A stretch of DNA of 64,000 bases from Gracilinanus agilis (GCF_016433145.1 NC_058135.1:278688276-278752275), one strand, 5' to 3'. Positions 52,837 to 56,824 are shown, numbered from the stretch's first letter. Numbers and translations are program-made. The notes: generated from the letters alone by a model not told the origin.

Positions 52837-53073
52837 AAGATTAAACTCAAGTCTTGAGACTCCTATAAGAATAAAATTCCATCCTTATACTCCAAAGACA
52901 TCACTTTTCTAGGCATTCATTCTGACCAATCTAGGAAGGTTCTGTACTTTGTTCTGAAAAGGGGATGGGATTTGAGAATTCTTTTTGTTGTTGTTGTTGT
53001 TTCTGGCTTCAGCAATTATTAGATGGCCTTCCTGAATTTATAAGTCTCAAATGTATTCATCTCTTTATTCCAG

Positions 53074-53772
53074 CTGAAGACTGGCGAAAAATGAGAAGGG
53101 TTATCAGCTGAAATGTCACATGTATGAGTACTCTCAAGGGATGTGCACAGGAAGGTCCTAAGAGGTGAAGAAAGTTCCTGGATTATTGGAAGAGCCCGTG
53201 TGAGTTAGTGCACTTCAGAAAAGCAGCAGGGAAAAGTCTCAGGGAGCAGGTAGAAAAAAAAAATCTCCCCAAGGTAAGGGATCTGGGGAACCTTGTTGTC
53301 ATCAACCTTAAAACTAAGGCCAAGTTTTGAGAAAGTCCCTATCTTTAGTGAATGTGAGAGAAGCTTCAGTCAACATTCCAATCTTTAAAAGTATCCAAAG
53401 ATCCATTCAGGGGAGAATGCTTCAAGTGTGTGGATTGTGAGAAAGGGTTCACTTACAACTATTTGTACATTAGAATCCATACCAGGAGAGGGGGAAAAAA
53501 AAAAACCAACCCTGAAACCTACAAAAGTCCTGAGAGTGGGAAAACCTTTAGTGAGAACTCCAACATCAAAAAACCTAAAGCAGGAGAGAAATCCTACTTT
53601 CTGTCTTGTACTGAGAGTGGAGATTGGTTCAGTGTGAAATCATCCCTCCTTATCCACCAGAGAATCCACACGGGAGAGATACCCTATCAATGCCCCCAGT
53701 GTGGGAAAAGCTTTACTCACCGTACAACGCCTATTAATCATCCAAGGCCCCACACTGGAGAAAAACCATCGA
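53074..53772 (+). pseudogene. Spacer plus decayed C2H2 zinc-finger array (terminal exon of the dead KRAB-ZNF gene, 5' part)
   Basis: Acceptor ctctttattccag at 53073. Finger remnants include CERSFSQHSNL*, CVDCEKGF and SSLLIHQRIHTGEIPYQCPQCGKSFTH...HTGEKP, with lost Cys/His residues, stops and frameshifts. Confidence 0.85.
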
Positions 53773-54077
53773 CAATCAGTTCTGTTATAACTCTTGTTTT
53801 GAAAATGGGAATCTGCTCCGATATGATTGCTCTGTTAGGCAATAATTTGACCATAATGCTAATTCTGGTTTGCTTATGCACAATTTCATCTGCAAGAAAC
53901 AGCTAGAATGAAGAAAACTGTACCCAGCTGAACGGAGCCACAAAACATACATACTTTAGATATCTACCAGCTACTTCACTTCACCATCTGTTATCTTAGA
54001 AGGTTGTTTTATTATTTTTTTTGTGTGTGAACTTTTCTATATTAAAAAAAAAAAAACACTCATTCCACATCCCAAAC

Positions 54078-55844
54078 ATGTCTAAGCGTCCGGGTTCCAA
54101 AACACCAAACAGTGGTGGCAAAAGGAAAACTTTCAGCATCGAGGAGAAACTTGAAATAATAAAGCGTTTTGAAAGAAACGAGAGAACGTGTGATATCGCC
54201 AGAGCCACAGGCATAAAGGAGTCCACCTTGAGGGCCATCAGAGACAACGCTGTAAAAATAAAAGAAACGTCGATGACGGGAGTAACTACGATTTCTGCCA
54301 AGTCAGTAAGGATAAGGCCTAAAGAAATTGCAGAAATGGAAAGACTGTTGAGCATATGGATCGAAGGGAAAAAGTCGAGGACCACCTTTCTCACAATCAA
54401 AGGAAAAGCACTCTCTATTTACGCGGATCTAAAGCGGAAAGCACCAAATCCGGCGGAAGTGGCGCCTTTTAGGGCTAGTTGCGGCTGGTTCAGTGGTTTC
54501 AAACATCGCTACAATTTCCAAAATCTTCAACTGTCGGGCGAGGCCGCCAGCGCAGAGCATAAGGCCGCCAAGGAATTTCCAGCCGTGATACAGAAATTAA
54601 TTAAGGAAGAAGGCTATACGTTGGATCAAATTTTCAATTTCGACGAAACGATTATCTATTACAAACGCCTGCCTCGAAGGACCTACATCTCGAAGGCGGA
54701 GAAGCACGCCCCAGGATATAAGTCCTCTAAAGATCGCTTAACTGTGATGTTCGGCGCCAACGCCAGCGGAGACTTGAAGCTAAAGCCGGTGGTGGTTTAT
54801 CGCTCCGACAATCCACGAGCCTTGAAAGGCATCGTGAAGGCCAGCCTCGGGGTCCATTACAGGTATAGCAAGAAAGGAAAGATGACGGCCCAAATCTGCA
54901 TTGATATTTTTGCCGAATTCTTCCCTGTTATTGAGTATTATTGCAAGAAAAAGAACTTGGCTTTTAAGATTCTGATCATCATCGATAATGCACCGAGTCA
55001 CCCCCCAACCATTGCGGAACTCAACCCGAAAGTCAAATTCGTCTTTTTGCCTCAAGAAACCACCTCTCTGATTCAGCCCCTGAATCTAGGGGTGATGGCC
55101 CTGTTTAAGGCCTACTATCTAAGGAGGACATTGAAGATGTTAATTGCAGCTACCGGAGGTGAGAACGCGGAAACGGCTCTCGAATTCTGGAAGAGATTTA
55201 ACATCAAGATGGCCATCGATATCATCGTGGAAGCCTGGAACGACGTGACCGAAGAGTGCTTGCATCACGTGTGGAAGAAAATGCTCCCGAACTTGATTCA
55301 GGATTTTGAAGGAGTGGAACCCGCGGAGCAATTGAAAAAAATTAAAGCAAACTGTGTTGATCTGGCAAAACAAGTTGGATTCGAGGAGGTGGAAGATGAA
55401 GATATAGATGAGCTCTTAGAACCTCACTCTAGCGACCTGAGCACAGAAGATTTGCAACAGCTGGCTGATGGCCAAGCGGAGGCCGAAGATGAAGAAGACG
55501 ACGATGACGATAGTGAAAGCCAGAAGGCTACCCCGAGACAGCTTGACACTTCGCAGTTATCGGGTGTTTTAAGTGTCATCGAAAAACAGTTGCAATGGCT
55601 TGAGGATAATGATTACAACGCGGAGCGGAGCAGAATAGTCGTGCATGGCATCCGCACGAATTTGGAACCATACAGGCAGCTTCTTTATGAAAGGAGGAGG
55701 CTAGCAAAACAGCAGAAATTGGACATATATTTTAAGCTAGTACGGAAGAGACACCTAGAGGACAACGAGCCACACCCGTCCACGTCTGGTGTTACCACTT
55801 CCCGTCCAGTTTCAGATAAACCTTCTTCTACCACTTCACAATAA
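54078..55844 (+). CDS. Intact Tigger-derived (TIGD/CENP-B-like) protein, 588 aa, probably domesticated
   Basis: ATG in ccaaacATGt. Contains a CENP-B N-type HTH (RKTFSIEEKLEIIKR...), a second HTH (EMERLLSIWI...FRASCGWFSGFKHRY), a DDE_1-like core (FNFDET, SKDRLTV, IIDNAPSHP, TTSLIQPLN), an acidic tract and a KQQKLDIYFK C-terminal motif. No stops or frameshifts in 1767 nt. Confidence 0.92.
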   Translation: MSKRPGSKTPNSGGKRKTFSIEEKLEIIKRFERNERTCDIARATGIKESTLRAIRDNAVKIKETSMTGVTTISAKSVRIRPKEIAEMERLLSIWIEGKKSRTTFLTIKGKALSIYADLKRKAPNPAEVAPFRASCGWFSGFKHRYNFQNLQLSGEAASAEHKAAKEFPAVIQKLIKEEGYTLDQIFNFDETIIYYKRLPRRTYISKAEKHAPGYKSSKDRLTVMFGANASGDLKLKPVVVYRSDNPRALKGIVKASLGVHYRYSKKGKMTAQICIDIFAEFFPVIEYYCKKKNLAFKILIIIDNAPSHPPTIAELNPKVKFVFLPQETTSLIQPLNLGVMALFKAYYLRRTLKMLIAATGGENAETALEFWKRFNIKMAIDIIVEAWNDVTEECLHHVWKKMLPNLIQDFEGVEPAEQLKKIKANCVDLAKQVGFEEVEDEDIDELLEPHSSDLSTEDLQQLADGQAEAEDEEDDDDDSESQKATPRQLDTSQLSGVLSVIEKQLQWLEDNDYNAERSRIVVHGIRTNLEPYRQLLYERRRLAKQQKLDIYFKLVRKRHLEDNEPHPSTSGVTTSRPVSDKPSSTTSQ

Positions 55845-56117
55845 CTCAGCAACTACAACCCTTCCAAAACCCACTTCTGCATGAAAACTTCAGATCTTTG
55901 CCAAGGTAAAGTGCCATATTTCTCACATACCTTCCTCATGCATAACTGTGGGCAGAGGAGGACTAGTCCAAATCCATACACTGCAATGTCCTCTACTCTA
56001 GCTCCTATGGGAAATAAGGTGAGGGCTCAGCGGTAACCCAAGGCTGTGGACCGCACCATTATCTATTGTAGCATTTAAAATTTCTTAACCACTTAACGTG
56101 TATAAAAACCATGGTGC

Positions 56118-56326
56118 GGGGGCAGCTGGGTAGCTCAGTGGACTGAGAGCCAGGCCTAGAGACGGGAGGTCCTAGGTTCAAGTCTGGCCTCAGACACTTC
56201 CCAGTTGTGGGACCCTGGGCAAGTCACTTGACCCCCATTGCCTAGCCCTTACCACTCTTCTGCCTTAGAGGCAATACACAGTATTGACTCCAAGACGGAA
56301 GGTGAGGGTTTAAAAAGGAAAAAAAC
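56118..56326 (+). mobile_element. SINE inserted in the 3' non-coding arm of the Tigger element
   Basis: TSD aaaaccatggt at 56105-15 and 56327-37. Confidence 0.9.
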
Positions 56327-56499
56327 AAAACCATGGTACCATTTTTCATGTTTCTGCCCTTTTTATATGTCACTGATTAAAGCTTTTTAGGGTTTCCCTA
56401 ACCCCATTTCCCCCATAACCCTGTGGCTTTTATTACCCAATTTTGCATAGTGTGGTGATTTTTAGGAATGCATATATTGCATTATAGCAGAACTGACTG

Positions 56500-56590: not shown

Positions 56591-56824
56591 AACAGCCTCA
56601 ACTCCAACCCCCTGAGGCACCAGGGACTTCAAACAGCTGAGAAAACTGAGAAAATTCTGAACACGGGGATGGCTTTGGCCAGAGAGTTGAAGTTTGTTGA
56701 ACACATCGAGATACATAGACTGAAAAGAGTTGGCCATGGGGCTTTGCCCGCAGAGGTGTAGCTGACATCTTTAGTGGCAAACAGGCTCCTTTCTGCCTCT
56801 CAGACATGACTAAGAAGTTGGCTG

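What the first reader, a model, noticed from the sequence alone, without database searches (positions are those of the whole stretch)
54078..55200. Transposase keeps its DNA-binding HTHs but has a D-D-N triad
Seen: D189 (gac, 54642) and D303 (gat, 54984) are intact. The third acidic residue, 32 aa later, is Asn (aat, 55083; LIQPLNLG instead of the usual QPxDxG). Other core motifs have drifted: DETIIYYK for DETGLFWK, KGKMT for xWMT, PQETT for PPNTT. Both N-terminal HTH regions read well. Established: Tc1/mariner/pogo catalysis needs the third Asp/Glu. Inference: a catalytically dead, sequence-specific DNA binder that could recognise dispersed TIR-derived sites like cagtcagttctgctataa and act as a CENP-B-like regulator or dominant-negative repressor of related elements.
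Basis: partly seen in the sequence, partly recalled or inferred. Interest (0 to 1): 0.72.

Follow-up and report, generated by a model that had tools for sequence, protein, structure and literature searches.

The report
Domesticated marsupial Tigger transposase, D-D-N triad
This is an old jumping-gene enzyme that marsupials have kept as an ordinary gene for about 80 million years, and in American opossums one of its three cutting residues has been lost, as in several known domesticated transposases.

Summary
Window 54078-55844 (+) is an intact 588-aa pogo/Tigger-type ORF with D189 (gac), D303 (gat) and N336 (aat). N336 sits in the column that is Asp in 93 of 101 non-marsupial homologues.

It is not a loose transposon copy. 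The same insertion, with the same flanks, TA duplication and inverted-repeat ends, is present in Antechinus, Sarcophilus and Dromiciops. Intact proteins exist in 9 marsupial species, and dN/dS is about 0.06.

A second linked paralogue ("B", beside BRI3BP) is present in 8 species.

N336 is shared with Monodelphis, so it is neither private nor a sequencing error. It is not fixed in marsupials. Orthologues carry Asp (Dromiciops and 4 diprotodonts) or Gly (dasyurids), and paralogue B is Gly throughout. That implies three independent losses.

The DDE domain is almost as constrained as the HTH domains (omega 0.04-0.09 against 0.04-0.05), so the HTHs show no clear excess conservation.

"Dispersed TIR sites" are not shown. 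Only the element's own two ends match.

Partial triads are already published for domesticated pogo genes (TIGD7 DD34N, CENPBD1 DD32G, JRKL D/N; PMC7386202). This is a new member of a known kind.

Other notes of this scan cover the same locus.

The parts
53061..53420 (.). Conserved non-coding block about 0.7-1 kb upstream of the ATG. It may be a promoter or 5' exon. It is context, not part of the ORF.
   Evidence: Four-species identity is 0.72-0.83, against 0.48-0.57 in more distant flanks. Stops occur in all six frames.
53430..53772 (+). Left flank: degenerate C2H2 zinc-finger exon ending in an HTGEKP linker (53751-53768), which the element interrupted.
   Evidence: Translation. The Dromiciops orthologue shows HTGEKP on the left of the insert and LIKHQRSHTG on the right.
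53773..53790 (+). Left terminal inverted repeat of the Tigger-like element (starts CA(A/G)TCAG).
   Evidence: Present at the same place in Dromiciops, Antechinus and Sarcophilus, preceded there by TA.
53791..54077 (+). Element-internal 5' non-coding segment.
   Evidence: Lies between the left TIR and the ATG. CpG o/e is 0.25. Alignable in all A orthologues.
54078..55844 (+). Intact ORF of 588 aa plus stop: domesticated Tigger/pogo-type transposase, marsupial paralogue A.
   Evidence: dN/dS is 0.055-0.083. CpG o/e is 0.96 against 0.12-0.15 in the flanks.
54120..54260 (+). HTH1, CENP-B_N-type DNA-binding motif (aa 15-61).
   Evidence: Pfam PF04218, 30.4 bits. 98-100% identical across A orthologues.
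54333..54521 (+). HTH2, Tc5/CENP-B-type second DNA-binding motif (aa 86-148).
   Evidence: Pfam PF03221, 19.5 bits, below cut-off. 1HLV match over residues 13-144. 94-99% identical across A orthologues; omega 0.02-0.04.
54630..55274 (+). RNase H-like DDE domain (aa 185-399).
   Evidence: Pfam DDE_1, 133 bits, aa 218-399. The AF2 model has the strand/helix order expected of the fold. Foldseek top hits are Mos1, SETMAR and Sleeping Beauty.
54642..54644 (+). D189 (gac), first catalytic Asp, retained.
   Evidence: D in all 19 marsupial sequences.
54879..54881 (+). K268 (aag), replacing the family-conserved Trp of the (G)WMT motif.
   Evidence: W in 93 non-marsupial homologues. K here, R in Monodelphis and Trichosurus, W in the other orthologues.
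54984..54986 (+). D303 (gat), second catalytic Asp, retained.
   Evidence: D in 101/101 non-marsupial homologues and in all marsupial sequences.
55083..55085 (+). N336 (aat), at the position of the third catalytic Asp.
   Evidence: D in 93/101 non-marsupial homologues. AAT here, GAT in Dromiciops A, GGT in dasyurid A, GGT/GGG in paralogue B.
55395..55541 (+). Acidic, low-confidence (probably disordered) region, aa 440-488.
   Evidence: Sequence. pLDDT below 50 for aa 451-488.
55548..55760 (+). Conserved C-terminal long helices (aa 491-561). A possible oligomerisation module (inference).
   Evidence: The AF2 model shows helices 491-511 and 515-561 with pLDDT 81-91. 96-97% identical among A orthologues.
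56117..56327 (.). Lineage-specific SINE insertion inside the element's 3' non-coding part.
   Evidence: Alignments to all three orthologous loci break at about 56113-56116 and resume at 56327. The same repeat occurs elsewhere in the window.
56482..56499 (-). Right terminal inverted repeat.
   Evidence: A perfect counterpart followed by TA is present in Dromiciops.

Best explanation
A roughly 2.5-kb Tigger/pogo-type DNA transposon inserted at a TA inside a zinc-finger linker before the marsupial crown radiation. Its transposase gene has since been kept as a stationary, single-exon host gene, here called paralogue A.

A second copy of the same element family, 3-5 Mb away on the same chromosome next to BRI3BP (paralogue B), was retained as well.

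The protein keeps several parts under strong purifying selection: two CENP-B-type helix-turn-helix motifs, the whole RNase H-like fold, an acidic stretch and a conserved C-terminal helical module.

The third metal-binding Asp has been replaced three separate times. It became Asn in didelphid A (this window and Monodelphis), Gly in dasyurid A, and Gly in the ancestor of B. Other residues near the active site have drifted too (DETG to DETI, W268 to K/R, PPNTT to PQETT).

Shown here: orthology, selection and the residue states.

Inferred: the opossum protein cannot catalyse excision or integration, and it works as a DNA-binding protein in which the DDE fold serves as a non-catalytic scaffold, as in TIGD7, CENPBD1, JRKL and CENP-B. 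Its targets and biological role are unknown.
For: - ORF and domains.
- Fold: Mos1, SETMAR, Sleeping Beauty and the CENP-B DNA-binding domain are the top structural matches.
- N336 is in the catalytic column: D in 93/101 non-marsupial homologues.
- Orthology: the Antechinus, Sarcophilus and Dromiciops loci are collinear with window positions about 49.9-62.6 kb, flanks included. The TIRs and TA duplication are at the same site in a zinc-finger linker.
- Nine A and eight B proteins come from four marsupial orders.
- A and B are sister clades (100/99), and each contains didelphids and australidelphians.
- dN/dS is 0.055-0.083 overall and below 0.1 in every domain of A.
- Positions 336 and 268 are among only 47 of 588 columns with three or more states in A.
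- The ORF is a CpG island (o/e 0.7-0.96 against 0.1-0.2 in the flanks) in all A orthologues.
- Partial triads are documented in domesticated pogo genes (PMC7386202, Table 1).
Against: - No expression data were obtained.
- Five orthologues still carry a complete D-D-D triad, so catalysis may have mattered, or may still matter, in some lineages.
- dS is near saturation between orders (0.8-1.1), so the omega values are approximate.
- The genome-wide copy number of the source family could not be measured.
- No biochemical evidence exists that Asn at this position abolishes activity in this particular protein.
- DNA binding is inferred from homology only.
Confidence: 0.75

Rival explanations
1. It is an autonomous or recently active Tigger transposon copy that happens to have an open frame, and the similar proteins in other marsupials are independent copies of a still-mobile family.
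For: TIRs and a TA duplication are still recognisable. RefSeq names all of them only 'TIGD1-like'. Gao et al. set TIGD1-like sequences aside as multi-copy and pseudogene-like.
Against: The insertion site and more than 12 kb of flanks are shared by species of three orders. The gene tree follows the species groups within each paralogue. dN/dS is about 0.06 with dS about 0.8-1.1. The third catalytic residue is missing in this copy.
Confidence: 0.03
2. The protein is still a nuclease or recombinase. Either the active site has been remodelled (for example the marsupial-specific N327E supplying a carboxylate), or Asn still supports metal binding, and the strong constraint on the DDE domain reflects retained catalysis.
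For: The DDE domain is as constrained as the HTHs (omega 0.036-0.09). D189 and D303 are invariant in all 19 marsupial sequences. Five orthologues keep the full D-D-D triad. E327 is shared by both paralogues and absent from the nearest transposon relatives.
Against: Three independent replacements at position 336, two of them to Gly, which cannot bind metal. There is further drift at W268, G192 and Q337. It is established knowledge that replacing any triad residue abolishes catalysis in Tc1/mariner-type transposases. No coordinates were available to test whether E327 lies near the site.
Confidence: 0.12
3. The ORF is expressed mainly as part of a fusion with upstream exons of the interrupted KRAB zinc-finger gene, acting as a KRAB-transposase repressor like POGK or KRABINER.
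For: The element sits in a dead zinc-finger exon. A conserved non-coding block lies upstream. Other notes of this scan propose a takeover of that gene. KRAB-Tigger fusions exist elsewhere in marsupials (P0144, P0161, P0185).
Against: The RefSeq proteins of paralogue A start at the same Met, with no KRAB domain recorded, in the species aligned. The frame is closed just upstream of 54021. No transcript data were obtained.
Confidence: 0.08
4. N336 is an assembly or sequencing error, or a private variant of the sequenced animal.
For: Only one run holds most of the stretch, and it may be the assembly's own source.
Against: Monodelphis domestica, an independent genome, has the same LNLG motif.
Confidence: 0.01

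Closest known systems
TIGD7 (Tigger-derived, DD34N) and TIGD6 (DD30N)
   Same: A stationary mammalian gene derived from a pogo-superfamily transposase. It has CENP-B_N, HTH_Tnp_Tc5 and DDE_1 domains, Asn at the third triad position and low Ka/Ks (PMC7386202 Table 1).
   Different: It comes from a different insertion and a different source element. The spacing is 32, not 34 or 30. It is restricted to marsupials. The third residue varies among orthologues (D, N or G) instead of being fixed.
CENPBD1 (Tigger-derived, DD32G)
   Same: It has the same DD32 spacing, and Gly at the third position as in paralogue B and dasyurid A. It is also a recent mammalian domestication with patchy retention.
   Different: No eutherian protein scored above primate TIGD1 (47-48% in the DDE region), while shark and Trichuris transposon copies reach 60-63%. 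Orthology is therefore unlikely. No CENPBD1 sequence was compared directly.
JRKL (DD34D/N)
   Same: It is a domesticated Tigger-type gene in which the third residue is Asp in some species and Asn in others, under strong purifying selection (Ka/Ks 0.055).
   Different: It is a different gene, present in all mammals. This locus shows three states and has a second paralogue.
Primate TIGD1 / Tigger1 transposase
   Same: It has the same architecture and DD32 spacing, and it is the source of the RefSeq name 'TIGD1-like'.
   Different: It is only 47-48% identical in the DDE region and is not orthologous. TIGD1 is reported as multi-copy, whereas this locus is syntenic across marsupial orders.
CENP-B
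   Same: It has a related N-terminal double HTH (1HLV match), an acidic stretch, and a transposase fold kept without catalysis.
   Different: CENP-B derives from pogoR and its triad is unrecognisable. It has a CENP-B dimerisation domain, which was not detected here. No evidence links this protein to centromeres.

Membership tests
pogo/Tigger superfamily transposase (architecture) | DDE_1 (PF03184) RNase H-like domain | tested here: met
   133.2 bits against a cut-off of 22. Foldseek top hits are Mos1, SETMAR and Sleeping Beauty.
pogo/Tigger superfamily transposase (architecture) | CENP-B_N (PF04218) first HTH | tested here: met
   30.4 bits against a cut-off of 21.2.
pogo/Tigger superfamily transposase (architecture) | HTH_Tnp_Tc5 (PF03221) second HTH | tested here: inconclusive
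   19.5 bits, below the cut-off of 22.2. It is covered by the 1HLV alignment over residues 13-144.
pogo/Tigger superfamily transposase (active enzyme) | Complete D-D-D catalytic triad | tested here: not met
   D189 and D303 are present, but position 336 is Asn.
pogo/Tigger superfamily transposon (element) | Terminal inverted repeats starting CAG, and a TA target-site duplication | tested here: met
   The 18-nt TIR pair is at 53773-53790 and 56482-56499. TA flanks both ends in Dromiciops and the left end in dasyurids; in the window the left TA has mutated to GA.
Domesticated (stationary) transposase gene | Orthologous position with shared flanks across distant species | tested here: met
   Loci L001, L003, L004 and L005 are collinear with the window over more than 12 kb.
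Domesticated (stationary) transposase gene | Purifying selection (dN/dS well below 1) and an intact ORF in all lineages | tested here: met
   Omega is 0.055-0.083, with bootstrap upper bounds of 0.1 or less for the whole gene. Nine intact A proteins were found.
Domesticated (stationary) transposase gene | Expression as a host gene | not testable with these tools
The only indirect signs are the ORF-wide CpG island and the RefSeq models.
Domesticated (stationary) transposase gene | Source family no longer mobile; low copy number | not testable with these tools
   No marsupial genome could be searched. Two paralogous loci are known, and other Tigger fossils are noted in this genome.
TIGD1 orthologue | Closest relative is eutherian TIGD1 | tested here: not met
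   Primate TIGD1 is 47-48% identical in the DDE region, against 60-63% for shark and Trichuris copies. In the tree the marsupial clade is nested among the lamprey, shark and Trichuris transposon copies, Trichuris being closest.
CENP-B-like centromere or satellite binder | Binding to a dispersed or satellite DNA motif; CENP-B dimerisation domain | tested here: not met
   No CENP-B_dimeris hit. The TIR motif occurs only at the element's own ends in the window and in seven related loci. DNA binding itself was not testable.

The most novel reading that the evidence does not exclude
Paralogue A could be a natural before-and-after series for transposase domestication. On this reading, one orthologous gene stayed catalytically competent (D-D-D, with near-perfect TIRs and TA duplication still in place in Dromiciops) for tens of millions of years after fixation. 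It then lost the third carboxylate independently in opossums (Asn) and dasyurids (Gly), and its paralogue lost it earlier (Gly). Catalysis would then be a late, repeatedly discarded function, or one selected against, and the D-D-D orthologues of diprotodonts and Dromiciops might still cut DNA.
Probability: 0.12. Interest if true: 0.65.

Novelty: new member of a known kind. Interest (0 to 1): 0.4.

Why it matters
It adds a marsupial-specific pair of domesticated Tigger genes to the vertebrate list of about a dozen pogo-derived genes. The main survey of that list (PMC7386202) explicitly set aside 'TIGD1-like' sequences as pseudogene-like.

Within one orthologous gene, the third catalytic residue can be lost repeatedly while both the DNA-binding region and the transposase fold stay under strong constraint. 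This makes the order of events in transposase domestication testable by comparing natural D-D-D, D-D-N and D-D-G orthologues.

A D-D-N triad in such a gene is expected rather than surprising.

Tried and rejected
Later alignments stopped at 56110 or began at 56600.
- DNA could not be fetched for the wombat, Monodelphis, Trichosurus, Petaurus and Gracilinanus-B loci because the files were too large. Codon analyses therefore rest on four A and three B sequences.
- A MAFFT --auto run on 124 proteins timed out and was rerun with a faster mode.
- No model coordinates are exposed, so the distance of E327 or N336 from D189 and D303 could not be measured.
- Rejected readings: sequencing error (Monodelphis shares Asn); active transposon (synteny, omega); TIGD1 orthologue (identity, tree); dispersed TIR sites (only two matches).
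- The large representative-protein search was not run. The region-restricted word search already recovered eutherian TIGD1 at lower similarity than the fish and nematode copies.
- CENPBD1 could not be compared directly because no sequence of it was returned by any tool.

Full report
**What is there**

Window 54078-55844 (+) is one uninterrupted ORF of 588 codons. The finding covers only its first two thirds.

- Pfam finds DDE_1 (133 bits) and CENP-B_N (30.4 bits). HTH_Tnp_Tc5 is weak at 19.5 bits, below its cut-off.
- The N-terminal 13-144 residues align to the CENP-B DNA-binding domain 1HLV.
- An AlphaFold2 model (mean pLDDT 69) has the strand and helix order of an RNase H-like core. Residue 189 lies in the first strand, 303 at the end of the fourth strand, and 336 at the start of the following long helix.
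- Its best structural matches are Mos1, the SETMAR transposase domain, the CENP-B DNA-binding domain and Sleeping Beauty.

**The observation**

In an alignment with 105 non-marsupial homologues, the three columns are Asp in 85/100, 101/101 and 93/101 sequences. N336 therefore occupies the third catalytic position, with 32 residues between the second and third positions (DD32N).

The other drifted motifs are also real:
- G192I in DETG
- W268K in GWMT
- P326Q and N327E in PPNTT
- Q337L in DQG

**It is a transposon insertion**

An 18-nt inverted repeat starting CA(A/G)TCAG bounds the ORF at 53773-53790 and 56482-56499. These are its only two occurrences in the 64-kb window, against 0.07 expected by chance.

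In Dromiciops both ends are flanked by TA, and the dasyurids keep the left TA. In the window the left TA has become GA.

The flanks read as a C2H2 zinc-finger linker: HTGEKP on the left and LIKHQR.HTG on the right. A Tigger-type element of about 2.5 kb therefore landed on the TA of a linker codon. A SINE of about 210 bp (56117-56327) later inserted in its 3' part in this lineage only.

**It is a retained gene, not a loose copy**

The word search returned 'TIGD1-like' RefSeq proteins from marsupials at 75-91% identity. The next best hits were a shark (59-60%), Trichuris (57%) and a lamprey (48-50%). Cluster look-up expanded the marsupial hits to two sets.

- Paralogue A: the window, Monodelphis, Dromiciops, wombat, koala, Trichosurus, Petaurus, Antechinus and Sarcophilus.
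- Paralogue B: Gracilinanus, Monodelphis, Dromiciops, koala, Trichosurus, Petaurus, Antechinus and Sarcophilus.

The window's own protein shares its 299,087,844-bp contig length with the Gracilinanus agilis B protein, and it clusters with Monodelphis. The window is therefore most likely Gracilinanus agilis (inference).

The A loci of Antechinus, Sarcophilus (two assemblies) and Dromiciops are collinear with the window from about 49.9 to 62.6 kb, flanks included. This is one insertion, older than the split of American and Australasian marsupials.

B loci share only the element with the window, not its flanks. They lie beside BRI3BP and sit 3-5 Mb from A on the same chromosome.

A maximum-likelihood tree puts A and B as sister clades (100/99). 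Each contains didelphids and australidelphians, and the pair is nested among the Trichuris, shark and lamprey transposon copies.

**Selection**

| Comparison (paralogue A, Nei-Gojobori) | dN/dS |
|---|---|
| Whole gene | 0.055-0.083 |
| HTH1+2 | 0.037-0.05 |
| DDE domain | 0.036-0.09 |
| C-terminus | 0.03-0.10 |

The bootstrap intervals overlap. dS between orders is 0.8-1.1, so a neutral 1.77-kb frame would not have stayed open. dS is close to saturation, which makes the omega values approximate. The closely related Antechinus-Sarcophilus pair gives 0.055.

The HTHs are 94-100% identical across A orthologues, the DDE domain 87-95% and the C-terminal helices 96-97%. The DNA-binding region is extremely conserved, but so is the transposase fold.

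**The triad across species**

| Group | Position 336 |
|---|---|
| A, window and Monodelphis | Asn (AAT in the window) |
| A, Dromiciops | Asp (GAT) |
| A, wombat, koala, Trichosurus, Petaurus | Asp |
| A, Antechinus and Sarcophilus | Gly (GGT) |
| B, all eight species | Gly |

D189 and D303 are invariant in all 19 marsupial sequences.

With Asp in the nearest transposon relatives, the most parsimonious history is three independent losses. W268 is K here, R in Monodelphis and Trichosurus, and W elsewhere. Positions 268 and 336 are among the most conserved in the wider family, yet they fall among only 47 of 588 columns with three or more states in paralogue A.

N336 is therefore neither an error nor private to this animal, and it is also not a marsupial-wide state. 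The constraint on this residue has gone while the rest of the domain is held.

**How it probably works**

Shown: a syntenic, selected, single-exon gene with a degenerate triad.

Established knowledge: DDE/DDD transposases need all three carboxylates for metal-dependent cleavage and strand transfer.

Inferred: the opossum protein no longer transposes anything. It probably acts through its double HTH as a DNA-binding protein, with the DDE fold and C-terminal helices serving as scaffold or oligomerisation surfaces, as proposed for other TIGD/JRK/CENP-B-type proteins.

The ORF is a CpG island. Its o/e is 0.96 here and 0.70-0.89 in the other A orthologues, against 0.1-0.2 in the flanks. Most CpGs lie at synonymous or codon-boundary positions. 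This fits a germline-unmethylated, transcribed gene but is indirect evidence.

The target sites are unknown. The TIR motif was found only at the element's own ends in the window and in the seven related loci. 'Dispersed TIR-derived sites' remains an untested idea.

**Comparison with the literature**

Gao et al. 2020 (PMC7386202) list 12 domesticated pogo-derived vertebrate genes with their triads:
- TIGD2: DD34S
- JRKL: DD34D/N
- JRK: DD32D/E
- TIGD7: DD34N
- CENPBD1: DD32G
- TIGD6: DD30N
- CENPB, TIGD3, TIGD4 and TIGD5: triad unrecognisable

A D-D-N triad in a domesticated Tigger gene is thus a known pattern.

The same paper excluded 'TIGD1-like' sequences as multi-copy, narrowly distributed and pseudogene-like. 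Two literature searches found no description of the marsupial pair.

A search restricted to residues 130-400 recovered primate TIGD1 at only 47-48% identity and no closer eutherian protein. The pair therefore appears marsupial-specific and is not orthologous to TIGD1. CENPBD1 could not be compared directly.

**Limits**

- No expression evidence was obtained. I worked beside those places afterwards.
- DNA was available for only four A and three B genes.
- Genome-wide copy number of the source family could not be measured.
- No model coordinates were available to examine whether the marsupial-specific E327 lies near the active site.

**Verdict**

This is a new member of a known kind: a domesticated Tigger transposase with a partial triad. 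Its useful twist is that the third residue is D, N or G in different orders within one orthologous gene.

Other notes of this scan describe the same locus from other angles and other Tigger-derived loci in this genome.

Noticed in passing
window 53061-53420: A non-coding block upstream of the element, inside the dead zinc-finger exon, is as conserved among four marsupials as the ORF. Four-way identity is 0.72-0.83 against 0.48-0.57 in other flanks, and stops occur in all frames. It may be a promoter or 5' exon of the transposase-derived gene.
   Followed up: partly
window 54000-56000: CpG o/e is about 1 across the ORF only (0.96 against 0.18 for the whole window). The same holds in the Antechinus, Sarcophilus and Dromiciops orthologues. 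78 of 91 CpGs involve third codon positions, so amino-acid selection alone does not explain them.
   Followed up: partly
P0144 (wombat), P0161 (Trichosurus), P0185 (Petaurus); not in the window: A third kind of marsupial 'TIGD1-like' protein of about 700 aa carries a KRAB domain (PF01352) fused to the Tigger HTH and DDE domains. It is about 50% identical to this ORF in the DDE region. It may be a KRAB-transposase fusion gene.
   Followed up: no
P0008, P0009, P0013, P0199 (Trichuris suis and T. muris): The nearest non-marsupial relatives are transposase copies in whipworms (57-67%), a bamboo shark (60%) and a lamprey (50%). They are closer than any eutherian Tigger. This patchy distribution suggests horizontal spread of the source family.
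   Followed up: no
L001 4634-4751 and L004 4590-4715 (dasyurid loci): About 1.3 kb upstream of the dasyurid A genes lies a fragment of about 125 bp that is 75-84% identical to ORF positions 54857-54982 of the window. It is a small internal fragment duplicated upstream, seen in dasyurids only.
   Followed up: no
window 56117-56327: A SINE, of which other copies lie at about 48.3, 51.1 and 52.2 kb in the window, is inserted in the element's 3' non-coding part. It is absent from all three orthologous loci.
   Followed up: partly
window 54273 (Met66): The protein on record for this genome (P0002, 523 aa) and Sarcophilus isoform X2 (526 aa) start at Met66 and lack the first HTH. Residues 15-65 are nevertheless 98-100% conserved among orthologues, so the longer form is very probably made.
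   Followed up: partly
L002, L003 (Dromiciops); L001, L007 (Antechinus); L004, L006 (Sarcophilus): Paralogues A and B lie 3.3-5.1 Mb apart on the same chromosome in three species. This is compatible with local hopping of the ancestral element.
   Followed up: no
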